In this document: piece by piece, positions 24,835-62,860 of the stretch
Numbering within the stretch: position 1 is the first letter of the stretch
Layout of the letters: every line of letters begins with the position of its first letter
NCBI GenBank assembly: GCA_964036045.1
Contig: OZ038378.1
Location: 806,001-870,000 of the forward strand
Direction: 5' to 3'
DNA: 64,000 bases
DNA from: Eutreptiella sp. 'Long Island Sound 2002'
Lineage: Eukaryota; Protista; Euglenida
Translations under genes and position numbers: made by a program
Notes under the pieces: generated by a model
Told to the model about the DNA's origin: nothing
Seen by the model: only the letters and a program-made list of their open reading frames with translations
Databases searched by the model: none

Positions 24835-24861
24835 ATATGAGTCACCCTTAAAAGCTCATTG
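24835..24861. repeat. Candidate 27-bp target-site duplication, copy adjacent to the poly(A) tail
   Basis: ATATGAGTCACCCTTAAAAGCTCATTG versus ATATGAGTCATCGTGAAAAGCTCATTG at 30666-30692 (24/27 identical); abuts T12 at 24862-24873. Confidence 0.8.
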
Positions 24862-25051
24862 TTTTTTTTTTTTGACTGACTCCAGAAGTTCAAAGAGTAC
24901 TCAAGACTTTGCTTGGGAAAGTGGGCGACTCCAGCATATGATACAATGGATCCCTGCAACGCGGGGCACATGGCAAAGACCCAGAGTTCACATGCGTATA
25001 CCAGTGGGCTCTCTGATGCGGTAGGCAAAACCGCCACGCCATATGGCAAGC

Positions 25052-26370
25052 CTATAATGCGTAAGATTTAAGGGGATGAAGACATGCTGGATCACGGTGT
25101 GCCATTCCCCACGGGTCCTCAAGAGTGACAAGCTTTCGTCGCTTTGCAGGGGCCATGTCTGGTGGCGGGCGTTGGCCCAGGATGCCGGGCCTTTTGCGGC
25201 ACTGACGTTTGGGCAAAGGCGATTCCACCCGGTGGGCGGCGCGCTCAGATGCCCACAATTGGCTCATCACCGAAAAGAGCTGAATCCTTCGGTTATGCCG
25301 CTGGTAGTGTTGGTCTGCGGAGGTGGTCCACACTCTAGCACGTCGCAAAAGGGAGTGCCAGTGCCATGATTGCCGCACCACATCATCTAGCACGTCGCGG
25401 TATGAGTCCATCAGTGAGGCCCCGAGGACGGCACGTTGATGCAGAAACCAAGGCTGGGCTAGATACTGCATTGCCGAAGGTACCTGCTGTGCCCCTGGGT
25501 CCGCGGCAGTGGGACAGAGGCACTGGTCGAGATATTTCACCGCCCATGACCTGGTGTGGTACGACTGCGGCCGGTCCCATGTGCGCACCGCTCTACGGTG
25601 GGACATCTCTTGAGAGGCGCGGCCATCCCGTCGTGATGTTCTCTCCCGGGGCCCTGTATACCCTACTTGATTGCGGAGGATAGAGTCCGTGGGGTTCGGT
25701 CGTAAAGCTCGTGGGCGCAGCTTTGTGTACCATGCCGGCACCGCTGTGGAGGGCGTGGGCGGCACCTGTGGGTCGCGAGGGGGCATGCTGAGTTGGCCGC
25801 GCAGTTGGCATACGCCATGTAAAGCGTGGTACTGGTGCCATGCCACACGCTCCCTGAGGTCTACCCGCATTGTTCGGGGGATGTGGTCCCATAGGGACTG
25901 TGGTATGCGAAGGCAGGAGACATGGTGTAGGTCCGCCGCGGACGCCCTGTTCCACCATTCCGTTACCGTATCTTGCCACGGTCCCCAGGTGCTAAGCCAC
26001 ATGTTGCGAAATGCGACTTTCCAACGCATGCAGTGGATGAGGCGCTTGTGGACAGTGGTACCGTGATGGAGGGGACACATGGGGCATTTGGGGGTGGTAT
26101 GGTCCCACGGCGCGCCCGTCCCATCCCATCGTACCTGGCCCCACAGCCATTTAACCCACAGCATACGTCGGTCCCCGCGCATCGGCAGCCAGGATACCCA
26201 GTGCGCACCGTCAAAAGTGACAACACGCCTCCGCTGGAGGATCCATTTCCGCGCCGGAGTGGGGGCGGGCCCGCCGCACATTGCAATATCTTCGGGGTGC
26301 CGGGGGTCGTAATCCGGCACGGGTAGGCGCGTGGCCATCTTGGCGAGCAGGTCTACTTCCCCATTGCGCC
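25052..26370 (-). pseudogene. 5'-truncated non-LTR retrotransposon ORF2-like C-terminal fragment
   Basis: Over 430 open codons with CPMCPLHHGTTVHKRLIHC (C-x2-C-x8-H-x5-C, zinc-knuckle-like) in Trp-rich context, followed by about 180 nt and A12; no RT core motifs present. Confidence 0.55.
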
Positions 26371-27514
26371 GAATTAAAAAAAAAATTTTTTTTAATGGAA
26401 CCAATAGTATGGACTGGGACCACACCAGCACCAGTCTTGCACGCAGTGCCACTGAAATTTACTCCACCCATCTGGTGCTGTATGCTGCACTGCAAGCATA
26501 TCTGCCGGGTCACAGCGCATTTGTCACCTCTCCACTGCCCACTTGATGGCAAGGCCAACAAACGCACAGACAATTGGTGTTCTACCAATCACATTACAAG
26601 ATGCAGGGGCCCAAAATTACCGGGGCCCAAAATTACCGTCCAGAGATGTTCGGTTCCAAATACCAACAGCTGGCACATGCAATGGAAGGGGCATTGGAGC
26701 TCACAAAAGAGGGAACCTACTTTTTTCCAGCACTACTTGTGCAGTATGCCCCATGCCCCTGCTTTTCCTGAAATTCCGTGCACATCACAATAATTTTCGA
26801 ATCGCCGGTCTTCTTTGGTTTTACAAAAATTGGACCTCTAAGGTAAATCTGTTGAATGACTTCAATAGACAGTCTAACCTGTCTTTGAAGGCAGAGAATG
26901 TGCCAAATGCAGTGCATCCTAACCCTTTTCCACATGTTACCATAAGCTTGACAAATGTGTGATGAATGATCTGGACATGGGATTAGCTCAACACCTCAGC
27001 ACACCTCATAGTAGGTAGCAATGGAGTTGCTCCACTTCCTACCGAGAGGTCGCTGGATGCATTGTTGCAATAGTGCGTTGCTCCACCGCAAGTCCAACAA
27101 CATGCTTGTGGCAAACCCCAATTGCGCTCCTTGTAAAGGGCAGGCTGGGGTGGTTCCTGCCGGACTTATAATGCAATTTCAATGTTCAGGCAACAAACGC
27201 CCTGTGGCGCCATGCACACCGCTGCGCAGCGCAAACCAGAGCAGTGCCGAATGTTGCCTTCAGTTCTCCACTTATCGAAGGTTATCAAATATTTCTTGGG
27301 CTGTCTGGGTTAACTCATCCCCCTGCCACAGGTTGGCCTCAAACCATGCTGCACACGGGGGTTCAGTGGGGGTAGTTGAGCTCCAAAAGGAATGTTGTGA
27401 GTCACGTGACGGCACTGAAGCATTGAAGAACATGGGTACTAATACGCAAGGTGCCCAGGGAGGGTCAACACTTGCTCCCTCTGGCCATAGAGGTCAGGGG
27501 GTTTCGAACCTCCG

Positions 27515-28609
27515 ACTCGTGACTCAGTACTCCGCTCTGCCGGCATGGCACCCTGATCCCACGCCTCACACAAATGTCGGTACAAAACCCATTGGAAGGT
27601 TTCCATTGTGTGATGTGTGGCGAAATTCCGTCCATGCCCAGGAAATTTGTCCGAGGCTGTTGTGCCACTGCTAGACCTCCAATGTACTGGAAAGCAGCCG
27701 TTGCAGCAGTTATGGACTGATGAGCAGCAATCCTTACCACTGACATCCATCACTGCAGCTTGGCACTTGTAAAAGACGCACATGCCACATACATGACTTG
27801 AAGAAAAGGTTGGGAGTGGTGGTGGTCAGGATGGAGGGGGCAAGAAGGTGTGGCACAAGGCCTTGCAACGGTTACCAGCAAGGACAAGAGGAGGAGAGGT
27901 GATGCGATCGAAAGGAGCACGGTAAAGCCTGCCCTCTGCATTCCTCACCCGAACCAATGCTTTCGAAGGCAGATACCATAAACAGTGCAAGGGCCAAAGG
28001 TCATACCCATCCAACGCCGCCTCGCATGACCAAACATGCAACACAATACCCCAGTGCTTCCAACTCGTGACTCAGTACTCCGCTCTGCCGGCATGGCACC
28101 CTGATCCCACGCCTCACACAAATGTCGGTACAAAACCCATTGGAAGGTTTCCATTGTGTGATGTGTGGCGAAATTCCGTCCATGCCCAGGAAATTTGTCC
28201 GAGGCTGTTGTGCCACTGCTAGACCTCCAATGTACTGGAAAGCAGCCGTTGCAGCAGTTATGGACTGATGAGCAGCAATCCTTACCACTGACATCCATCA
28301 CTGCAGCTTGGCACTTGTAAAAGACGCACATGCCACATACATGACTTGAAGAAAAGGTTGGGAGTGGTGGTGGTCAGGATGGAGGGGGCAAGAAGGTGTG
28401 GCACAAGGCCTTGCAACGGTTACCAGCAAGGACAAGAGGAGGAGAGGTGATGCGATCGAAAGGAGCACGGTAAAGCCTGTCCTCTGCATTCCTCACCCGA
28501 ACCAATGCTTTCGAAGGCAGATACCATAAACAGTGCAAGGGCCAAAGGTCATACCCATCCAACGCCGCCTCGCATGACCAAACATGCAACACAATACCCC
28601 AGTGCTTCC
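27515..28609. repeat. Near-perfect tandem duplication, 548-bp period
   Basis: ACTCGTGACTCAG starts at 27515 and 28063; GTGCTTCC ends at 28061 and 28609; I noticed one substitution (GCCTGCCCT / GCCTGTCCT). Confidence 0.95.
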
Positions 28610-29315
28610 GTGCAACCCTCACATCCCATTACTCCGTGCAACACTCCATCACACGGTCACAGTGCAACACAATGTCGATGTGCGCTGACGTCCAACTCAG
28701 AGCGGAGGCAACAGGGCCGCCAGGGAACAGCAGTCCTCCACAGGAGGGGATGTTCAGGAAATCCCCTCTCCTTCTGGTGGTATGAAGAAATGAAGTTTGC
28801 AACGTCAGACAAGAAATGCAGTGCGAACATGTGCGATGGGTCTGGAGCAAATCTGGCTCCAAATGACGGTGGGAGGTCTTAGAGTCGCCACGGCTGTAGT
28901 GAGGGTCTAAAGCACTGTGGGGCATTGTTGATTGTTGTTGAGGGTTGTTCAGGGATGTGGACGGTTTCTGTTGCCATAGAGGAACGGTCAGGGCCGTTGG
29001 CGTGTTGAGGAATGGCGAGGGTCAACAGGGGTGAGCTGATCGACACAAGTGCCAGTTTGAATGGAACTCGTGTCCTGGTATTAGACCCCTATGAGGCTCA
29101 CTGAAGAAATGTTGAATTGGATTGAATATGGTGCATTACGTGAGTTATCAAGGGGATTCTAGGCCGGTCTGAACAAAGGGTCAACAAGGACTAGACATGA
29201 GACACTGTACATGGGAGCACGTTTAGACGTCAGCTCAACAAAAAAAAGGCTGCTGCTGACCTATACTGCTCTCTCTTCTGAACTTCCTCAACCTCCTCAC
29301 GACTCGCCGTTCTCA

Positions 29316-30620
29316 TTAGTCATCAGCGAACATGCAACAGAGAACACAGCAAAAAATTACGGCATAAATTGATGAGTACACGATCCACTGCACCATACAC
29401 GACGTGGTCTGCGATTGCAGTTCTGATTGCATGGTGTACGGAGTGTACTCAGACACCCAGTTGATAAAAAGCCTCTTGTACCCGCGATCAGAGGCAGGGA
29501 ATAATTTGGCTGCCGTGGTATATTGCCCATACTCCTCCGACTCCATCATTGCATACACCGACCGCGAGCGGTAGACTTGCGCAAATCCCCCAGGTCTGTA
29601 ATTCCATCCGCAATTCTGCTGAGCAGCTGCTCCACAATCTCCAGTGGTGGAGTAGCATATGGCAACTGGGATGATACCCTCGCAGTGGTCGGCGACCGGA
29701 CTTTTGTAATATCTGCCCGCATCCGTAACCGTCTTCAACTTCACTGGGGCTGCACAAAATGTGTAGCGCTTCCCCTCCGCCACAAGAACCTGCATCTTGA
29801 CGCTGGTGCGGTCGATCGTCCAATCGGGATCCGTAAAGCGAATCCATTCAATATCGTCATTCCAACGCTTCGGTGAAATAGTGGGGCCTGGGCTCTTCCA
29901 ACAATTCGCCTCAGCAATGTAGGGCATGATTGCCCGTTGGCACATAAAGGGCATGGTGTTGGTACACGCATTGACCTGGAATCCGTCCAGAGAAGCAGAT
30001 GCACACCCAGCCACGTGCTCATCTTGCGCCTTTTTCCATGGTCTGTATGCAGAAGGCAGCAGGGAGGGATAAACCCACTTGGCTTGAGTACTTGCAGCCG
30101 TCACACCACCTCCTGTTCCTGTGCTAAGCCCAGTCCAAAAGTTCGAAACGCTGGCATTCAGTGCTACTTGTCCCAAATAATTGAGCGCCCCGGGGGTTGT
30201 GATTGCCACAAGTTCCGCCTTTAGACCGTCGCAATGATCAGTCGCACTGTGCCAACTGCTCGGCTCCGTGAACAACTTGTAGCACTGATTGTCGTAACTG
30301 ACCCAACCGACGCCACAATCGGTTTGGTAGATCAAATCTCGTGACACGGCCACCTTTTGGGCAGTCACGGCAAGCGGAAACGAAGTCCCAAGAGCCATCA
30401 TAAACGAAACAATACAGAGTGCGATTCCAAGCTCCGAGTTGTCTTCATCGTCTGTGGTACCGGCAATTATCGCCAAGGCACAAATCCAAACGGCTGCCAT
30501 ACCAAAGTTGATAAGGAATGACCATCCCCATACTTCGAACAAGCCAACCATGTAACAAAGCCCAAGTTGTGTAAAGAACAAGATTGGACAAAGTATAATG
30601 CAAGGGGAAATCCGAGGCAT
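29316..30620 (-). CDS. Intronless multipass membrane protein with C-type lectin-like domain (434 aa); retrogene
   Basis: ATG at 30620 (MPRISPC); about 3 N-terminal hydrophobic segments; CGVGWVSYDNQCYKLF...SWHSATDHC...LVAI...FWTGL...C...C...FMCQ CTLD pattern; Cys-rich second region; C-terminal hydrophobic segment. Confidence 0.9.
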   Translation of the reverse strand: MPRISPCIILCPILFFTQLGLCYMVGLFEVWGWSFLINFGMAAVWICALAIIAGTTDDEDNSELGIALCIVSFMMALGTSFPLAVTAQKVAVSRDLIYQTDCGVGWVSYDNQCYKLFTEPSSWHSATDHCDGLKAELVAITTPGALNYLGQVALNASVSNFWTGLSTGTGGGVTAASTQAKWVYPSLLPSAYRPWKKAQDEHVAGCASASLDGFQVNACTNTMPFMCQRAIMPYIAEANCWKSPGPTISPKRWNDDIEWIRFTDPDWTIDRTSVKMQVLVAEGKRYTFCAAPVKLKTVTDAGRYYKSPVADHCEGIIPVAICYSTTGDCGAAAQQNCGWNYRPGGFAQVYRSRSVYAMMESEEYGQYTTAAKLFPASDRGYKRLFINWVSEYTPYTMQSELQSQTTSCMVQWIVYSSIYAVIFCCVLCCMFADD

Positions 30621-30636
30621 GGTAGCTGCAACCAAA

Positions 30637-30664
30637 CGAAAAAAAATAGACACTCAGAAAGTGT
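30637..30664 (-). other. Genomic copy of the complete 28-nt euglenid spliced-leader exon
   Basis: Minus strand reads ACACTTTCTGAGTGTCTATTTTTTTTCG, the euglenid SL as I recall it from the literature. It is followed by a 16-nt 5'UTR and ATG, not by the GT of an SL-RNA intron. Confidence 0.95.
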
Positions 30665-30665
30665 G

Positions 30666-30692
30666 ATATGAGTCATCGTGAAAAGCTCATTG
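30666..30692. repeat. Candidate 27-bp target-site duplication, copy adjacent to the SL
   Basis: Separated from the first SL base by a single nucleotide (30665); matches 24835-24861 at 24/27. Confidence 0.8.
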
Positions 30693-54130: not shown

Positions 54131-57100
54131 GCTCTTGCAGGGATCCAGCCATTACCTGTATGCTGGGTCTTTGGGACAGTTCCCATACCTGCCAACATGC
54201 TCCGACTTGTCACATACACTGTTTTATCACGGCTCTCTACCGCGGAGGAAGACAGCTGAGACCATGTGCATTTGGGCCACACCCCCTTTCCTGTCCATAC
54301 TTTTGATTGCTTTAGAGAGCCGTGGGCAGACCCAACAACACTCTGTGCAGAACCACCGAGGCACGGGGGGGGGGGGGGGGGATGGAAATTGCGAAAATTT
54401 GGAACGGCGAAATTGCTGTATGTGAGGGAGCCCGGCGCACTGCACATCACACCAAGCGCGGTGTTTCGTGTGCTGTTTCTAGTATTTTCTAGGAATTTTC
54501 AGTTTGGCAAGGACGCGGCGGCCTGAGGGATAAGCATATAACAGTGGAGGGCTCCACTCAAACTCCTCAACAATGCAATGGTGGTTGTAGCCGCCAACAC
54601 CCCCTGCTAGGGGAGGCCGTAGGTTGATGATGAGAGGAGAAGGATGCACTGTTTGACACCGTCGTTACATCAAAGAGGCATGAACCCCACGTTTGGAATC
54701 GCTACCATAGGGGTTGCCCAGGCCCACAAGGCAGCTGTTTCATCTGTTTTGTGTTTCAAATCGCTACCAAGAATGTTGTGCCATTGTGCAGCCATGTATA
54801 ACAATGCTTCTGTGACTTGGTCAGCGGGCCATCTAGTTTGAGCGATGTGGACGAGAAAAAAGATTGTAGAACAGTTTCAGGGCTGAAAAAAAGCGGTATG
54901 CTGTGCAACAAGCAAATGCACAGACCCTTGTTTGAATATCAAGCATTGATGGTCTACAAAGAATGTGCACACCCCACCACCTAGCCCTGTGCACGCATCC
55001 GTGGAAGACGTTTGTGCCTCTGAGTGTGGGTTGCTTTTTTCCCAAAGGGGAGGGGTTGAGGCACCCGTGGCTATTGTCCACCATCACAACAGCCATCACA
55101 ACATGGCTTGGCGCCCTTTATTCTGCAGCCATGGCAGATGGGCTCACCGCGGGGTCACAGGGCCGATGAGGTGCTGAAAAAATGCACAGAGGGTAGATAG
55201 AATAGTGCCACCTGAACAAGTGATAGAGGGAACACCCAAAAGACAGCGGCGCGCTAGGCTTCCTTTGTTTATAACACTTGGTGCCGAGTTTTCAGTGGAC
55301 CAAATGTGATCCATAGTATGGCCTGGAACATTCAGTGGGACTGCCATTCCCTTTTTGCTCTTTTTGCATGCTCTTTCTGCTTTGTCACCCTTCCTTACCA
55401 ATCCAAGCACGCACGACGCCTATCTGCCGACGCCGACACCGATGTCTGTCTGCTAGGGCTTTCGCCACCGGAGGTCTGCAAGGGAAGGCATCTCATGCCA
55501 GAACGAGATGCATTGGACTCCACACCGCCAGACCCTGGGTAAAGACCGGCTTGCATGCATTTGGAAATGGCCCCACTTCCAAGGCTTTCAAGGTGTGCAA
55601 AAAGTGCAAATTCTACACAGTGCGCCCACGGCGCGTGCGCACAACACCTAATGTGCCCCCCTGTGCAAGCATGTCACTCACCAGCCAACAGTGTTGGATG
55701 GTATGCCATATCTACAGCGAAATTCACAATCCAAGGGACCTGTTCGGTCAATTTGGTCATACTTTTGCAATTTTCTCCTCTTGCAATTGTGATTGCTGCA
55801 TTGGCTTTCCATCCACCTCAAATTTGTGGAGTGCTATTATGAATTTCCGGTGGTCACAACAACCACTGCAGCCACAACAACAACCGCAGCAACGAACAGA
55901 AAAGCAACGGCAGCAGCACCACGAGCACCACTAGCAGCACCACCACAAGCAGCAGCAGCAACCGCAAGCGGGACCGCCCTTTCCTTTGGCCCTGGTGGTT
56001 ACCTATCCGAATACTATTTTTTTTTGTTCATCCACCAGTCCAAAATTCGGCCCCATGCAGGGAGCAGAATCATGCCAACACCATGGTCCATAATGGTTTG
56101 TTGATATGCCGGTTTGTCCGAGGCGTTGACAAACACTCCCTCGGATTTCCGGCAGTGGTACATTCAACCATCAACGGTATGCCTCTTGGCCACGCGTCTA
56201 CATGTGACACTGGGTACAGCATGTCTCTTCTGTCTTACATGCATCGCGTACTTGTCGCTTCTACCTCTACGCATCATGTCATGCTTACTCTCTCCCTCAG
56301 CCTATCCATCTCCTCTATTCCATTCATCCACTTGCACACCTCTCATTGTGTGTACCCTCTCTCACCCTCTGTCGCGCTCTCTCCTCTCTTGACACCACCT
56401 CTTTACAGCTGTGTGCGTGTTGGGGGGGGGGATCACCCTATTGGAGAAGGAAGCCCACATGGGCCTCAGTGTCAGAGCGCACTTATGCAGACCCCTTACT
56501 CGCAGAAACCCTTACTCGTGGCGCGTGTGCCGAGGCCGTCGTTCGCTCGTGCGCAAACTGCGAGGTTCAACATTCCTACGATCCTATTCCCTGCAGATAA
56601 CCATGTGCTCCGTGTCCCAAAGCCCTGCAAAGGCCACCCTGGCCAGGGTCTAGGATCTCCATATGGACAGAGTGCTGCCAACAAACTGCGGCCCCTGCCC
56701 TTGAGTCCAGCCTACAGAGCACCAAAATACACATGCACAACCATGTGCCCTGCCACCTCCCCCACTACCCGCCCATGCATCCCTGGCTGCTGACGCCCCC
56801 CCCCCCCCCAGCGAGGTCGGGACTGACAGAAGACTGGCTGGACTGGGTGCCTGGGGCATCAAAGCCTGCAGCAACCCAGACGACGGACCGTTGGTTAAGT
56901 CCGCCATCAGCAGGCAGAGGTCTCTGCTAGGGCCTTGTGCCCACTCACCACAGCACAAGGATGCAGCACCCGGCGATATCCTCCCCCGCCCCCCCGCCCC
57001 CCCCCCCGCAGCAAACAACGCAAAACCCAGTCAGAAGGCAACCACATTGCAATGAACAACCGAGACATGCAGCAGAGTAGTGCAAACAAAGGGCACCCAT

Positions 57101-58482
57101 GAGCAAGCTTTCATGCCGCAAGATGCAAGCCCTGGATCTGGCCACAAAGGTGTCAGGCCACAAAGGTGTAAGAGAGGAAAATTACACAGCAATACAGACG
57201 CGCAGCAACACTGATGCGCGGGAGCCCCCGCCGCTCTCTTTGAGTGTGTGTGATGTCCCAGATAACTGCAATGTATTGACAGCCAGTGCTTAGTGCTTGT
57301 GAGCTTGCCGTTGCTGGGCAACAGCACAGTGGGGCACAGCCAACCCTCATATTTGGGTACTAAAGAAAAACAGGACTGTAGACCAGAATGGACAACGAGG
57401 GGGCGCTATGCAGCTGATTTTAGCCCACATGAGATGTTTACTTTCGCTTAGATGAAACAAACAAATTGGAGTTCGTCGGTTGGTTGAGCAACGACACACA
57501 AGGTGTTGTGCACTCAAGCCCACAACAACTAAAACTTGTTTCATGGACCACTTATCTATGCTGTATCATCCATGATATTCATGGCTGTGCCTGCCAAAAA
57601 GAACGTCATGGTGCATGTATCTGCAGTATGTGCATACATGGCTGCAATCATTCGGGGCCATTCCTCAACTCTGCACTCCAAGGAAGCAGGCTACCCAGCT
57701 GATGGGCCTATTGACATAAGTTCATTTGTAATTTGCCCACAGAAGTCAAAGCTGCTCATCGCAAGACAAACATCCAGTCTCCACCTTGGGCACAGGGGTC
57801 TGTGTATATATAACTCCCTGCAGGAGGGCGATTGAAACGCCCTGAACCCTGGCACCAGCTCTCTTAGGCACCTTCCAACCTCCATATTTTTCTCAACCAA
57901 TACCTGAGCCCGCTTATGAGGCAAACATCCATTGTCAAGGAACGGTCGGAATAAAGCAGCCCCAAAATGATGTTAGAGCTGCAGCAGTAAAGTTCCAGAA
58001 AACTTCAGTCAACGCAATCTTTGCAATATCTTCAGCTATATGCTAGAAAATGACGGCAGAAGCAACCATAAAGTAGTGGCATGGGAGGACAATGGTGCAG
58101 TCAAACAGATACAGAGCAAGATGGACTGCTCTGCACTGTGAGTGGTGTGCCAGTTGTGACTATGGGCTGCAGTTGCTTGAGCGGAGTGGTGACCATTAAC
58201 CTGGAGCCCAAAGTGCCATCTTAGCAGCTTTTGTCCGCTCCCGACAATCCCTCAAATGCTGGTCTGCAGCAGTGAATGTCTTGGCTAGTAATCGTGATCC
58301 ACGGTGACTGAAACCCTCCACAAGACACTCTTTGGACCAACCTGAAGCATCAGTGGGGGCTGTGGAAGGCGACCTGTGGACTGTGGGCTGCAGCTGAACC
58401 TCAGTACCATCACGTGCGCCTTCCGACACATGAAAGAAAATCATGAAAAACGCAATCATGCTTTTATCGTATGAGGTGCTGT

Positions 58483-61008
58483 CTACCAGAAATCGTCGTC
58501 GTCACTGTCTGGCACTCTCCTCCTCGCTCCCTTGCCTCGGCCACCTTTGCCTTTTCCACCCTTACCGCCCTTCCCACCTCCGCCCTTCCCACCTCTGCCC
58601 TTACCTGACTGCTCCAACCATTCCCTGTAAAATTCATCACCAGGCCAATACTTACCACTCTTCCGCCTCTGATCATACTTTTTCTGCCACTGATACCGCG
58701 CCTTCGCCTCCCTTTGATTGTTCTCCTTTCGAACTGCCCAATATCCTTGGTTCTTCCACAGCCAGTCCCTCTTCTTCTTATCCCTTGCCACAAGCCGGCG
58801 CCTTTTCTTCTCCTTTCTGTACTCGTTGATGTCCCCCTTGTCAACAATCTTGTAGTTTTTGGAACGCCCAAACGCCTCCTGCACCGGTCGATCAAGTTCC
58901 ACCATCTGCTCTATCTTCTCTGCCAGGCGCGCCTCCTCCGGCAAATACATGGTCCACGCCCATCCTGGCACTTTGTTGCGGGCTGTCCGACCCACACAGT
59001 GCAGCCACTCAACTGCATTAGGGGGGAACTCAAAACAGATCACATGATTAACGACTGCAAGATCAATGCCCCGCGCAGCTGCGGGAGACGCCACCAGAAT
59101 GGGCAATTCTCCCGATCTGAAAGCCTCTAGCCGCGTGTGCTTTGCCTGTGACCGCTGGTGGTAGGTCTGTGCATCATGCCCCGCGTTCCTCAGCGCCTCA
59201 GCAGCAGCTTCCACGTTCGCCTTGCTGCAAGCGAATACCAGCACGTGGCTGTCTCCCTTCGACATAACATCCTCCATGAGATCCATGAACTGCTCCATAC
59301 GGTTCTCTTCAGAACACGGCACAAATTTATGTGTTAGTGTCTCGGAGATACGGTGCAGCCGCTGACCGCGGACCCAGGTAGCATTTGGGAACTTCTTCAG
59401 GACGGTTCTGGCTAGATTCTCCTCCCGTGCCCCCGGACTCCCTGACAAAGTTGCCCCCACGAGCACGTACTGGGTCTGGGTCCCATCCTTCTTGTTCTTC
59501 CTCGCAAGGAGCTTCAAGACATCCTCCGTCGGCACCCGCTGGGCCTCGAACATGTGGTCTGCCTCATCGAAAACCGCGACGTCGAAGCCACGAATCTCTT
59601 TGTCACCGAAATATTGCGTGATGTACGGCGGTGTGCCAATGACAATGTCAGGCTCGCCTTCGGGCACATACTCGGTGTATGCCATCACATTGTCCACCTG
59701 AATCCAGCGGTCATCCTCCGGCAGAGCCTGCATTAGGCCTTCTAATACACGGGCGACCTGGTTTGAAAGCTGCTTGCTCGGTTGGAGGATCAGCAACCGG
59801 ATTTGCTCCCCCTTGAGCATCCGCTGCAGCATGGGAACGAGATATGCAAGGGTCTTCCCAGACCCTGTCTCCGCCAGCATCACCACGTCACCACCCCCCA
59901 GGATCGGCGCCCATGAGCCGCTTTGAATGGGGTTCGCGGAGGTGAAACCACCTTCCGACAGTGCGTCAATGAGGTCTGGCGTGGCTCCCAGCTCAGCAAA
60001 AGATTCATCTTGGTCCCGTGGAACGACGTTCACAGTCGCTTTGGGGGTAAGTTTGACCCACTCCTCTTCCTCATCCTCTCCTTCCTTGGGCTCTGCGTCT
60101 TCCCAGTCCGTGTTACCATAGGCCCAAGGGGGCAGCAACGTACCATCGTCCAGCCTGATCCAACCACCGATGCTTATAGGCTCTTCTTCTTGTTCTTCTT
60201 CACTGTCATACTCGTCCCCACTGTCACTCCTGTCACCATATTGGTCGTCCTGCAGCCACCCATCCCAACCCCCTTTGCCGTCGTAACTCCAACTACCATC
60301 CTCGTCCCATTTGCCGCCATAATTCCACCTTTCGTCAGCTCTTTGGCCATTATCCCACGCTCGATCCCTACCCCAGCCTTGATCGTTTCCCCACCGCCTG
60401 TCCTGATTGCTACCCTGACCCCATTGGTTGCGGCCCCACCTCTGGTCACCGCCCCACATAGGATCGTCTTGATCAACTTCCCCATCCTCGCGCCAATCAC
60501 TCCAAGAGTCCCAGCCATTATAGCTGTTATCCGCTTGTCCAGTGTTCCGATAGGCTGCTGCTGTAGCCACAGGAGGCAGAAGAGGCATCTGGCTGTGCAC
60601 CCGTCTACCTCTGAGCACGAAGAGAACAACCAACCCGATAGCCATACCAATCCCTAGGACTGGCCCTTGCCAAACCCAATTGCTGACAACTGCATGAGGC
60701 TGGTCACCAGATAGCCTGAAAGACTTGCTATTGGACAGCATCGATTCAACCTCTGGTGAAGGCAACTGAGGAGATCTGCGTGCAGGTCTTGCAAGCTGGG
60801 TCCGCACATTTGTCGAAGTCGATATTCGCTCGGTGATGCCCGCAGTCCGACTCGATGGCGAAAGGGCTGCAATCAAGAGATGGCCATCAGCATCCGCTGG
60901 GCGTGCACTGAGTGCGCCAGAGGTCATGGCCCCCATTACCACAACCCCTGTTGCCAACAGCATGCAGGGAATAGCCTGGAAGCCTCTTGGTCCCTGAGTG
61001 TCTGCCAT
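58483..61008 (-). CDS. Intronless DEAD-box RNA helicase with euglenid class-I plastid-targeting presequence (841 aa)
   Basis: Q motif SFAELG...PIQ, AETGSGKT, PSKQL, TPPY, DEAD, GAT, ARGID, HCVGRTAR; N-terminus has a hydrophobic signal, an S/T/R-rich transit region, a second hydrophobic segment (VLGIGMAIGLVVLFVL) and basic RGRR; GK/RG-rich C-terminus. Confidence 0.95.
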   Translation of the reverse strand: MADTQGPRGFQAIPCMLLATGVVVMGAMTSGALSARPADADGHLLIAALSPSSRTAGITERISTSTNVRTQLARPARRSPQLPSPEVESMLSNSKSFRLSGDQPHAVVSNWVWQGPVLGIGMAIGLVVLFVLRGRRVHSQMPLLPPVATAAAYRNTGQADNSYNGWDSWSDWREDGEVDQDDPMWGGDQRWGRNQWGQGSNQDRRWGNDQGWGRDRAWDNGQRADERWNYGGKWDEDGSWSYDGKGGWDGWLQDDQYGDRSDSGDEYDSEEEQEEEPISIGGWIRLDDGTLLPPWAYGNTDWEDAEPKEGEDEEEEWVKLTPKATVNVVPRDQDESFAELGATPDLIDALSEGGFTSANPIQSGSWAPILGGGDVVMLAETGSGKTLAYLVPMLQRMLKGEQIRLLILQPSKQLSNQVARVLEGLMQALPEDDRWIQVDNVMAYTEYVPEGEPDIVIGTPPYITQYFGDKEIRGFDVAVFDEADHMFEAQRVPTEDVLKLLARKNKKDGTQTQYVLVGATLSGSPGAREENLARTVLKKFPNATWVRGQRLHRISETLTHKFVPCSEENRMEQFMDLMEDVMSKGDSHVLVFACSKANVEAAAEALRNAGHDAQTYHQRSQAKHTRLEAFRSGELPILVASPAAARGIDLAVVNHVICFEFPPNAVEWLHCVGRTARNKVPGWAWTMYLPEEARLAEKIEQMVELDRPVQEAFGRSKNYKIVDKGDINEYRKEKKRRRLVARDKKKRDWLWKNQGYWAVRKENNQREAKARYQWQKKYDQRRKSGKYWPGDEFYREWLEQSGKGRGGKGGGGKGGKGGKGKGGRGKGARRRVPDSDDDDFW

Positions 61009-61038
61009 TAAGAATGTGGAGTCAAAACAGCATCAAAA

Positions 61039-61052
61039 CGAAAAAAATAGAC
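61039..61052 (-). other. Truncated spliced-leader relic upstream of the helicase ATG
   Basis: Minus strand GTCTATTTTTTTCG equals the 3' half of the SL with 7 rather than 8 T; 30 nt before the ATG. Confidence 0.75.
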
Positions 61053-61588
61053 CTTGCCCCTGGTGATTACCTGCACAAACAATATGAGACGAATGGGAAG
61101 CCGGTGTTTCATGATGCTGTTGCAATCCTTCGCCTGGAGAAGGTGGGGGGGGGGGGGGGGCTAGCTTGAAACAATGCAAGCAACTCAAGGGGCAGCAAAG
61201 CAAACCAAAAAAAAAGCAAACAAAAACCACCCCATTTCCCAACTATTCAAGGGGTCCAAAAAACAGAGGGTTTAAAAAACCCACCCCGCGTTTTACTTTT
61301 CAGATCTGCCCCCCCCCCCCCCCCAAGCCACCGGTGACGAAAATATTATCCAACACAATGGCACATGGGACAAGCCTCTCCTCACGGGAGGGGACATGCC
61401 GCCTTGGCGAGTCATCAACTTCATCATTGTGGAAGGTATCCATTTTATTCTGGTTATCCCTTGTTGCCTACAAACTTTGGTGACTGGGCACCCACTGGAA
61501 GGGCTCCTATTTTTCACCGAGCTTAGAAGTCAAGGCTTGGTGGATGTCGTTATCACAGGGGGAATCCTTGCACTGCGCGCCACTGTTA

Positions 61589-61633
61589 GGGGGAATGTTT
61601 GCCCGGCGCACGCCTGGCGCGCTAACTTCCCCC
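61589..61633. mobile_element. 45-bp minimal PIF/Harbinger-like element with TTA target duplication
   Basis: TTA|GGGGGAATGTTTGCCCGGCGCACGCCTGGCGCGCTAACTTCCCCC|TTA; equals the left end fused to the right end of 1723-2557. Confidence 0.8.
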
Positions 61634-62860
61634 TTAGACTATGTTCCCCCCCAAGAGCCCCAGGCACGTCCCTCAGAAACGCCCTTGGAATTAGGCGACC
61701 CAAATAGGCCTAGAGGGGACTTTAAGGAGGACCTTCCCAGTTCTTGTGGCAGTGGTGAAGGACTGGGGGCCTTTGGGGGGGAACTTGGTTGTGTTTTGGG
61801 CGACGGAGATGGAGGGCAGTGAGGTGGCAAATGTGAACTTGGGATAGCAAAAGAGATGGACTCCATCTTGCGCTGCCGATTCACCACTCTCAACCCATCT
61901 TGGGAGTATTCCAAGTGGATGAGTCTGTCTTCAGCCGCCCCAACCACCGTGGCAAGAAGTCGCAGGCCGTTGGAGCAGGTGTAGAACACCCTATTCCCAA
62001 TACTCAGACCCACGGAGAAAATGGGCCTGGTAAGTGAGGAGGGAAGTATGATGTCCTGTAGCAGGCACCCCAAAAGTGTATCGCCATATCAATTGACCGA
62101 GAAAAAGAGTGGATGTGGTGGAAATGAGGAAAAAATGTGTGCAAAGGGTACAAATGGGTGAAATAGGGTGAAAAGCCAAAAATGCCATATCCCCAATGCA
62201 CCAAAACCTACTACCAAACAACAATGATGCCCAAAGTACCACAAAGTGTGGGTTTCTACTACGGCCGGACGCCCAAATAGTTGCACTACACTCGCACTGC
62301 CCGTGTGCAATGCGCTTAAGGCGCCCCCGGAGCTGTGGTGTTTGTTTGAGTGGTCGACAACAACCTTACTGTCGCACACCAGTGTCTCTCTCTCCTCAGC
62401 TAGAGCCGCCACTATGACAGCTCCAATCACCTCCGTGCGGTCGGAACGTTGGAGCCTGACACCCGCGCCAGAATTTTCAGCCCACCGCATGTGACAACCA
62501 CCCCCACCCGTTGGATGGAATAGTGACACAGCCTGACCTTACTCCCATCGCTATACCAATTTATACCTAATTTTCCTCCTCGATTCATGTAGCATTGGAT
62601 ACCGGCAATCATTGTGGGACAATAACAAGGCGGCACTACCCCTACTCCCTGGCACAATGATGGTTGGTCGTAGAAACTGGATGCCCCCGCCAATGCAATT
62701 CCAGCCAATGTTCTCAATATTCACGCATGTATACTACAAACCTCTGCTTCCATGTTTGTACACTCAAAGCAAAGGTGAAAAACCTGTGTGGGACCTAAAT
62801 ACTTCCTATGACTCAAAGGCAAACACATGTGAGAATGGCTGCCATTGTGGTAGACTAGGG

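What the first reader, a model, noticed from the sequence alone, without database searches (positions are those of the whole stretch)
61009..61080. Second SL relic: truncated SL in front of the intronless plastid helicase, predicting a double-SL mRNA
Seen: GTCTATTTTTTTCG 30 nt before the ATG of a 2.5-kb intron-free CDS. There is no AG between relic and ATG, but AGs occur immediately upstream (GCAAG) and at TTTGTGCAG (about 61071-61079). Inference: an older or 5'-truncated retrocopy that stayed functional; if trans-spliced, its mRNA must keep the relic behind a new SL, as in dinoflagellates. Two SL-marked genes among five in 64 kb suggests retroposition may be common. No poly(A) or TSD was found for this gene.
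Basis: partly seen in the sequence, partly recalled or inferred. Interest (0 to 1): 0.78.

Follow-up and report, generated by a model that had tools for sequence, protein, structure and literature searches.

The report
Spliced-leader stump marks helicase retrogene
A euglenid alga's only copy of a probably plastid-targeted RNA helicase gene was copied back from messenger RNA: its DNA keeps a 14-letter stump of the RNA-only leader tag, a duplicated target site flanks the insert, and the cell now splices a fresh tag 18 letters upstream.

Summary
GTCTATTTTTTTCG lies at 61052..61039 on the minus strand, 30 nt before the ATG (61008) of an intact, intron-free 841-codon DEAD-box helicase gene.

It is not chance. 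The 14-mer occurs 695 times in the 2.28-Gb genome, against 13 for the reversed control. In most sampled copies the rest of the spliced leader (SL) precedes it.

The 20 nt abutting the stump recur 5.05 kb downstream (17/20), just after an A9 run. The degenerate 19-mer covering both copies occurs only at these two places in the genome. So a ~5-kb insert entered through RNA and was cut short 12 nt into the SL.

Its 3' third holds two dispersed repeats, and the A-tail belongs to the last one, so the retrocopy is composite.

One RNA contig shows a new SL joined at TTTGTGCAG|GTAATC (AG 61072-61071). That acceptor sits in a repeat fragment at the target site.

No parent gene remains.

This scan has found SL-tagged retrocopies at many other places in this genome. 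I found publications on them only for dinoflagellates.

The parts
61058..61139 (-). 82-nt fragment of a dispersed repeat family lying just upstream. It supplies the pyrimidine-rich tract and the AG now used as trans-splice acceptor.
   Evidence: at least 40 genomic copies at 80-90% identity to query positions 22-103; in the alignment with nine copies, the similarity stops at CACCAGGG on one side and at about 61139 on the other; no further similarity in either flank.
61071..61072 (-). AG of the 3' splice (trans-splice) acceptor TTTGTGCAG|GTAATC. The first exon base is 61070.
   Evidence: tables 7 and 8: X4 contig 32 lies on 60782..61071 and ends with 8 loose letters. Together with the G at 61071 these read TTTTTTTCG in mRNA sense, which is the 3' end of the SL.
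61053..61072 (-). 5' copy of the target-site duplication (AGGTAATCACCAGGGGCAAG), abutting the stump. Without its AG it forms the 18-nt spacer between the new SL and the stump.
   Evidence: this is the only other match at up to 3 mismatches in 64 kb, with 0.01 expected; the degenerate 19-mer occurs twice in 2.28 Gb, both times here.
61039..61052 (-). SL stump GTCTATTTTTTTCG. It is the 3' 14 nt of the spliced leader (7-T form) and the 5' end of the retro-insert.
61009..61038 (-). 30-nt original 5' UTR with no AG. It holds a 3-codon upstream ORF, ATG CTG TTT TGA, at 61033..61022.
   Evidence: Read.
58483..61008 (-). Intron-free CDS of 841 aa: two N-terminal hydrophobic segments around an S/R/A-rich stretch, a W/D/G-rich region, the DEAD-box helicase core (residues 335-705), and a K/G/R-rich tail.
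   Evidence: RNA contigs are colinear with no joints.
57203..58482 (-). Single-copy 3' region, probably the 3' UTR. RNA contigs cover it at least down to about 57229.
   Evidence: no other genomic match to query positions 1-1280. table 8: X1 record 1 and X4 records 25-28.
56523..57202 (-). Dispersed repeat A inside the insert. Its copies share a 3' end and start at variable 5' points.
   Evidence: hits to query 1281-1962 at 71-77% identity.
56014..56387 (-). Dispersed repeat B, about 370 nt, ending in the A9 run (56025..56017). It is the 3' end of the insert.
   Evidence: hits to query 2096-2469 at 76-87% identity, with a common 3' end at the A run and variable 5' starts..
55985..56004 (-). 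3' copy of the target-site duplication (AGGTAACCACCAGGGCCAAA). It probably extends upstream to about 56014, right after the A run.
   Evidence: no empty site elsewhere in the assembly.

Best explanation
The 14-mer is the DNA copy of the last 14 nt of a spliced leader that once headed a mature, trans-spliced helicase mRNA.

That RNA was reverse-transcribed and inserted by a LINE-type, target-primed mechanism as a ~5.05-kb unit (61052..about 56005, minus strand). Copying or joining stopped 12 nt short of the SL's 5' end. About 20 bp of target DNA (possibly about 31 bp) was duplicated on both sides.

The unit is composite: SL stump, 30-nt 5' UTR, intron-free CDS, 1.28 kb of unique 3' sequence, then two dispersed repeats. 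The last repeat provides the A-tail. Either the source transcript ended in transposon sequence, or the reverse transcriptase switched templates from transposon RNA to the mRNA.

The insert landed behind an 82-nt repeat fragment whose pyrimidine-rich tract and AG (61072-61071) now serve as a trans-splice acceptor. The present mRNA is therefore SL + 18 nt of duplicated target + stump + 30 nt + ATG.

The gene has stayed intact and expressed, and it is the only copy left.

Shown: the stump, its genome-wide excess, the genome-unique flanking duplication, the repeats, the intact ORF, and RNA coverage. Supported by one contig: the new SL junction. Inferred: the LINE mechanism, how the transposon pieces joined, plastid targeting, and loss of the parent gene.
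For: Stump position and distance to the ATG.

Genome excess: 695 copies against 13 for the control. In 26 of 30 sampled copies the rest of the SL precedes the 14-mer and varied 5' UTRs with ATGs follow. The canonical 8-T 19-mer has 3,843 dispersed copies against 0 for the control.

Flanking duplication: the 20-mer abutting the stump recurs once in the window, on the same strand, 12 nt after an A9 run, with 0.01 expected. The degenerate 19-mer occurs only at these two places in 2.28 Gb. Both copies continue past the end of the repeat-family similarity with the same (G/C)CAA(A)GG, so they copy one another rather than being separate family members.

No SL similarity lies upstream of the stump: 2 of 11 positions match. 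This fits truncation, not decay.

New SL junction at CAG|GTAATC: X4 RNA contig. Intron-free and expressed: X1 and X4 contigs are colinear with no joints between 57600 and 61071. DNA contigs from X12 and X15 span the stump and both junction sides.

The closest paralogues are only 37-61% identical and are split into exons. Helicase domains are intact.
Against: The SL junction rests on a single contig of depth 3.5 from an estuary metatranscriptome. It shows only 8 loose letters plus one shared G, and no raw reads were available.

The two duplication copies differ at 3 of 20 positions.

The A9 run is the tail of repeat B, not a clean mRNA poly(A). The 3' boundary therefore reflects a composite event whose order cannot be resolved.

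No parent gene and no empty site were found to compare with.

X1 also shows low-depth coverage upstream of the acceptor, to 61324. This could be unspliced precursor or DNA carry-over.
Confidence: 0.8

Rival explanations
1. Chance: a T-rich 14-mer in a 5' UTR happens to equal the SL's 3' end, and the gene was never retroposed.
For: About 13 copies per genome are expected by chance (reversed control). Among the 40 copies not preceded by T, the control count is 8. This copy has no SL similarity upstream.
Against: The match sits in sense orientation, 30 nt before the start of an intact 841-codon intron-free ORF. A genome-unique direct duplication begins exactly at its 5' edge and ends after an A run. 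The closest paralogues have introns.
Confidence: 0.03
2. An older, originally full-length SL relic whose 5' 12 nt were lost later by mutation or a small deletion. On this reading the flanking duplication is unrelated to this gene's 5' end.
For: Most relics in the genome are full length. The insert is old, given about 15% divergence between the duplication copies.
Against: The 14 retained letters are perfect while the 11 letters before them match the SL at only 2 positions. That is a step, not a gradient. The step coincides to the base with the end of the duplicated target sequence.
Confidence: 0.07
3. A plain mRNA retrocopy into whose 3' end repeats A and B inserted later, for example into its poly(A) tail. 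On this reading the insert was not composite at birth.
For: Poly(A) tracts are favoured targets of LINE endonucleases (general knowledge). A and B are separate families with their own typical ends.
Against: No A-rich remnant lies at the 5' edge of A or B or anywhere between the stop codon and the A9 run. The single duplication encloses everything, and its 3' copy follows B's tail directly.
Confidence: 0.12
4. Assembly artefact: cDNA or transcript sequence mixed into the genome assembly.
For: None specific. It is considered because the structure looks like an mRNA.
Against: Contigs of two runs with flat depth of about 30-34 across genic and non-genic parts (X12 and X15, read as DNA) span the stump, both flanks and the repeats. 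X12 record 9 covers 57600..61304. They may, however, come from the sample used for the assembly.
Confidence: 0.01

Closest known systems
Dinoflagellate SL-tagged retrogenes ('recycled' processed cDNAs; Slamovits and Keeling 2008, as reviewed in PMC6050394; PMC5585692; PMC12014239)
   Same: A DNA-encoded remnant of an RNA-only spliced leader lies upstream of a functional gene. The gene is trans-spliced again, so the mRNA carries a new SL followed by a relic. Such relics are numerous in the genome.
   Different: The lineage (Euglenida) and the SL are different. Here the relic is separated from the new SL by 18 nt of target-site DNA, and the acceptor comes from a repeat fragment, not from an AG inside the old SL. 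The relic was shortened by 5' truncation at integration. A flanking target-site duplication and a transposon A-tail are visible, pointing to LINE-type insertion.
LINE-mediated processed retrogenes and chimeric or 5'-transduced retrocopies of animals (L1-type target-primed reverse transcription)
   Same: Intron-free copy, 5' truncation, A-tail, a direct duplication of about 20 bp of target, and transposon sequence at the 3' end within the same duplication.
   Different: The reverse transcriptase responsible is unidentified. The 5' end is marked by an SL. Expression is restored by trans-splicing to a chance acceptor rather than by capture of a promoter. No parent gene survives.
Other SL-relic retrocopies noted by this scan in the same genome, for example the one at 24835-30692 of this window
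   Same: An SL copy in DNA before an intron-free ORF, with a transposon-derived 3' end and flanking duplication.
   Different: That copy keeps the full SL, whereas this one keeps only 14 nt. The 3' transposon pieces of the two are unrelated.

Membership tests
SL-tagged retrogene (dinoflagellate type) | DNA-encoded SL or SL relic in sense orientation upstream of the CDS | tested here: met
   14 of 14 letters match the SL 3' end (7-T form) at 61052..61039, 30 nt before the ATG. Genome excess is 695 against 13.
SL-tagged retrogene (dinoflagellate type) | The mature mRNA carries a new SL upstream of the relic | tested here: met
   X4 RNA contig runs 60782..61071 and then continues with the SL's terminal letters. 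This is one contig of depth 3.5, so it needs confirmation.
SL-tagged retrogene (dinoflagellate type) | The relic abuts the new SL because an AG inside the old SL is reused | tested here: not met
   The acceptor AG at 61072-61071 lies 18 nt upstream of the stump, in target-site DNA. Other loci of this genome do show the abutting form (L011 and L014).
LINE-type processed retrocopy | Direct target-site duplication flanking the insert | tested here: met
   The copies match at 17 of 20 positions, with 0.01 expected in the window. The degenerate 19-mer is found only at these two places in 2.28 Gb.
LINE-type processed retrocopy | 3' poly(A) just before the 3' duplication copy | tested here: inconclusive
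   An A9 run lies at 56025..56017, 12 nt before the 20-nt copy, or directly before it if the duplication is about 31 nt. However, the run is the tail of repeat B.
LINE-type processed retrocopy | No introns where relatives have them | tested here: met
   The ORF is continuous and RNA contigs are colinear. The nearest paralogues on C4, C18 and C6 match piecewise as exons.
LINE-type processed retrocopy | An intron-bearing parent gene elsewhere in the genome | tested here: not met
   The best other match is 46% identical over residues 316-477. That search used a stricter first look, so weak matches may be missing.
Chimeric or 5'-transduced retrocopy | Transposon 3' end in the same orientation at the insert's 3' terminus, inside the same duplication | tested here: met
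   Repeat B (56387..56014) ends in the A run just before the 3' duplication copy.
DEAD-box RNA helicase | DEAD and Helicase_C domains with conserved motifs | tested here: met
   Pfam PF00270 at 5.5e-25 and PF00271 at 2.9e-16. Motifs AETGSGKT, DEAD and HCVGRTAR are present. PDB relatives are Hera, DDX17 and CshA.
Euglenid class I plastid-targeting presequence | Signal peptide, then an S/T-rich transit-like region, then a hydrophobic stop-transfer segment (PMC2920757) | tested here: met
   Hydrophobic segments lie at residues 9-35 and 111-137, with an S/R/A/P-rich stretch between them. Localisation itself cannot be tested here.

The most novel reading that the evidence does not exclude
In euglenids, SL trans-splicing together with LINE-type machinery forms a regular route of gene renewal. 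mRNAs that end in, or are joined to, transposon 3' tails are written back into the genome. They are expressed without a promoter of their own wherever a pyrimidine tract plus AG lies upstream. They can replace their intron-rich parents, even for organelle-targeted housekeeping genes. This locus would be a fully bounded example, with stump, target duplication, transposon handle, borrowed acceptor and a lost parent.
Probability: 0.35. Interest if true: 0.75.

Novelty: new variant of a known kind. Interest (0 to 1): 0.55.

Why it matters
SL relics in DNA give a direct mark of genes that passed through an mRNA stage, independent of introns. So far this has been exploited only in dinoflagellates.

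This locus shows the same process in an unrelated SL-using lineage, and both insertion boundaries are preserved. Three things can therefore be read off directly: the mechanism (target-primed insertion, 5' truncation, transposon tail), how expression was regained (a chance acceptor in a repeat fragment), and the outcome (the retrocopy is the only surviving gene).

With thousands of SL copies in the genome, a census could measure how much of a euglenid gene set has been renewed this way. It could also test whether this helps explain the mix of intron-rich and intron-free genes.

Tried and rejected
- Two scans of metagenome contigs, one for the SL-spacer-stump junction and one for the stump plus 5' UTR: 0 hits each.
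- Exact k-mer search (9 nt or more) for a target duplication: it missed the duplication because the longest exact run is 8 nt. I saw the duplication next to the only A9 run.
- Continuation of the upstream repeat family into the downstream flank, as an empty-site test with paralogous repeat copies: no similarity, because the local copy is only an 82-nt fragment.
- Empty site elsewhere in the assembly: none.
- Parent gene: none closer than 46-61% identity over exon-sized pieces.
- Shared transposon tail with the other retrocopy in this window: none.
- Pfam on ORFs inside repeats A and B and in the downstream flank: no families. ORFs in copies of the upstream repeat are short.
- I did not run the large protein searches. 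The protein family is clear, and absence of a parent was tested in the organism's own genome.

Full report
**What is there.** The gene lies on the minus strand. GTCTATTTTTTTCG occupies 61052..61039. The ATG is at 61008..61006, 30 nt further on. The ORF runs without interruption to the stop at 58483, giving 841 codons. No AG occurs in the stump or in the 30 nt before the ATG.

The 14-mer equals the 3' end of the euglenid spliced leader, with 7 Ts instead of 8. The full leader stands at 30660..30637 in the same window. It agrees with the 28-nt leader published for Eutreptiella (abstract of PMC3621762, listed). The species is not disclosed to me, so I call it a euglenid.

**More than chance.** In the window, 0.21 matches at up to 2 mismatches are expected and 2 occur, both on the minus strand. 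In the 2.28-Gb genome the exact 14-mer occurs 695 times, against 13 for the reversed control.

- In 26 of the first 30 copies the rest of the leader (ACTTTCTGAGT or near it) precedes the 14-mer. Varied short leaders and ATGs follow it.
- 655 of the 695 have the leader's T in front.
- The canonical 8-T 19-mer has 3,843 dispersed copies, with control 0.

DNA copies of an RNA-only tag are therefore abundant. Most are dead: only 5 of 30 sampled copies head an ORF of 150 aa or more. Several belong to repeat families.

The copy studied here belongs to a minority with no leader similarity upstream (2 of 11 positions). About half of the 40 copies not preceded by T are of this kind. For such copies chance is not negligible a priori (control 8), so position and flanks matter.

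**The boundaries of the insert.** The only A run of 9 or more downstream of the stop codon on this strand is at 56025..56017. Twelve nt after it stands AGGTAACCACCAGGGCCAAA (56004..55985). This matches, at 17 of 20 positions, the 20 nt that abut the stump, AGGTAATCACCAGGGGCAAG (61072..61053).

- It is the only other match at up to 3 mismatches in the 64-kb window on either strand, with 0.01 expected.
- The degenerate 19-mer covering both versions occurs exactly twice in the whole genome, at these two places.

The first 15 nt of the duplicated sequence belong to a dispersed repeat family, of which an 82-nt fragment (61139..61058) lies upstream of the stump. Both local copies continue beyond the end of that family's similarity with the same (G/C)CAA(A)GG. 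Other family members continue with TGTTGCG.... So the two are copies of one another, not independent family members.

The 3' copy also matches the family for a further 10 nt or so towards the A run. The duplication may therefore be about 31 nt and may follow the A run directly.

I read this as a target-site duplication around a 5.05-kb insert whose 5' end is the G of GTCTA (within 1-2 nt, given shared G's). The 3 differences in 20 nt suggest an old event.

**The insert is composite.** The 2.46 kb between the stop codon and the A run consists of four parts:

- 1.28 kb of single-copy sequence;
- repeat A (57202..56523; 71-77% identity to many copies);
- a 135-nt spacer;
- repeat B (56387..56014; 76-87% identity).

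Matches to B share the 3' end at the A run and start at variable 5' points. Matches to A behave likewise. That is the pattern of 5'-truncated non-LTR elements. The A-tail is therefore B's tail.

No A-rich remnant lies at the 5' edges of A or B, and a single duplication encloses everything. So I favour one composite event: either a source transcript that ended in transposon sequence, or template switching. Later insertion of A and B is less likely but not excluded.

The other retrocopy in this window (24835-30692; notes s1-216450 and s1-216565) also ends in transposon sequence. Its 3' end is unrelated to A and B.

**Expression and the new leader.** I could lay reads only once, and only contigs were served.

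- X12 and X15 have flat depth of about 30-34 over genic and non-genic parts and very high depth on repeats. One X12 contig spans 57600..61304. I read these runs as DNA, and they confirm the structure, though perhaps from the assembly's own sample.
- X1 (probably RNA; 34 million letters in all) covers 57600..60946 in abutting contigs with no differences and no joints.
- X4 (a metatranscriptome) covers most of the gene. The gene is therefore expressed without introns.
- X4 contig 32 lies on 60782..61071, running through the stump and the spacer. It then carries 8 letters that do not fit the genome. In mRNA sense, with the shared G at 61071, they read TTTTTTTCG, the end of the leader.

A 30-nt pyrimidine-rich tract, which belongs to the repeat fragment, precedes that site. 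The mature 5' end is thus leader + 18 nt (the duplication minus its AG) + stump + 30 nt + ATG.

Caveats: this is one contig of depth 3.5 showing 9 leader letters. A poly(A)-like reading on the opposite strand is unlikely, because the loose end starts with G and the site is a canonical acceptor, but it is not formally excluded. X1 also has thin coverage upstream to 61324, which could be precursor or DNA.

**The gene.** Pfam finds the DEAD and Helicase_C domains. The motifs are intact. Solved relatives are ordinary DEAD-box helicases.

The N-terminus has hydrophobic segments at residues 9-35 and 111-137 around an S/R/A/P-rich stretch. This is the layout described for class I plastid presequences of Euglena (PMC2920757). 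'Plastid' is therefore plausible but inferred.

In the organism's own genome the gene is single. The nearest relatives are 37-61% identical and match piecewise as exons on C4, C18 and C6. No parent survives, and no empty site exists elsewhere.

**Comparison with what is known.** Leader relics upstream of retroposed genes, and mRNAs with a new leader followed by relics, are documented for dinoflagellates (PMC6050394; PMC5585692 and PMC12014239). Six full-text searches found no such report for euglenids. The library is incomplete, so this is not proof of absence.

This locus differs from the dinoflagellate pattern in three ways:

- The relic is separated from the new leader by target DNA.
- The acceptor is borrowed from a repeat fragment.
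- LINE-type hallmarks are preserved.

Other loci of this genome do show the abutting form, with the second copy starting just after the leader's internal AG (L011 and L014; L044).

This scan has already noted the phenomenon at many other places in this genome. This locus is one more member, but it is unusually well bounded.

**Verdict.** The new elements are the target-site duplication, the composite transposon tail, the borrowed acceptor and the (single-contig) RNA junction. Confidence in the main explanation is 0.8.

Noticed in passing
window 30637-30664 (minus): A full 28-nt spliced leader is encoded in DNA 16 nt before an ATG. This is the first SL-marked gene of this window, and other notes of the scan already cover it.
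   Followed up: partly
L011, L013, L014; L044: Stacked leader copies in DNA. In L011 and L014 a full SL is followed at once by (T)GTCTATTTTTTTCG, meaning the second copy starts just after the SL's internal AG, as in dinoflagellates. In L013 two full copies lie 11 nt apart.
   Followed up: no
L053, L061, L063, L066: Several truncated stumps with no SL upstream are directly preceded by runs of 3-7 G. These may be untemplated additions at the 5' junction of retrocopies, or chance.
   Followed up: no
L003/L004/L011/L047; L010/L021/L055/L057; L016/L023/L026/L030/L051/L052: Groups of SL-headed loci share the sequence after the leader. Multi-copy families, probably transposons or retroposed repeats, therefore carry the SL at their 5' end.
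   Followed up: no
window 56014-56387 and 56523-57202: Two dispersed repeat families whose genomic matches share a 3' end but start at variable 5' points, as non-LTR elements do. No Pfam domain was found in local ORFs.
   Followed up: partly
window 61488-61900; also 61145-61162 and 61306-61324: Very high-copy repeats upstream of the gene: contig depth is 12,000-51,000 against about 30 elsewhere. Homopolymer G/C runs of 15-18 nt attract many partial contigs.
   Followed up: no
window 61022-61033 (minus): A three-codon upstream ORF (ATG CTG TTT TGA) lies directly after the stump in the 5' UTR.
   Followed up: no
window 58483-61008 (protein residues 150-330 and 740-841): The helicase carries a long W/D/G/E-rich low-complexity region before the core and a G/K/R-rich tail after it.
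   Followed up: no
runs X4-X7: Four estuary metatranscriptomes from four studies hold this gene. The one I laid (X4) matches with essentially no differences (11 of its 12 laid contigs at 99% or more). The organism or a very close strain therefore lives in, or was present in, estuarine samples.
   Followed up: no
window 55820-55970 (minus): The downstream flank holds a GCT/GGT/GTT-rich low-complexity stretch with many tandem-array matches elsewhere in the genome.
   Followed up: no
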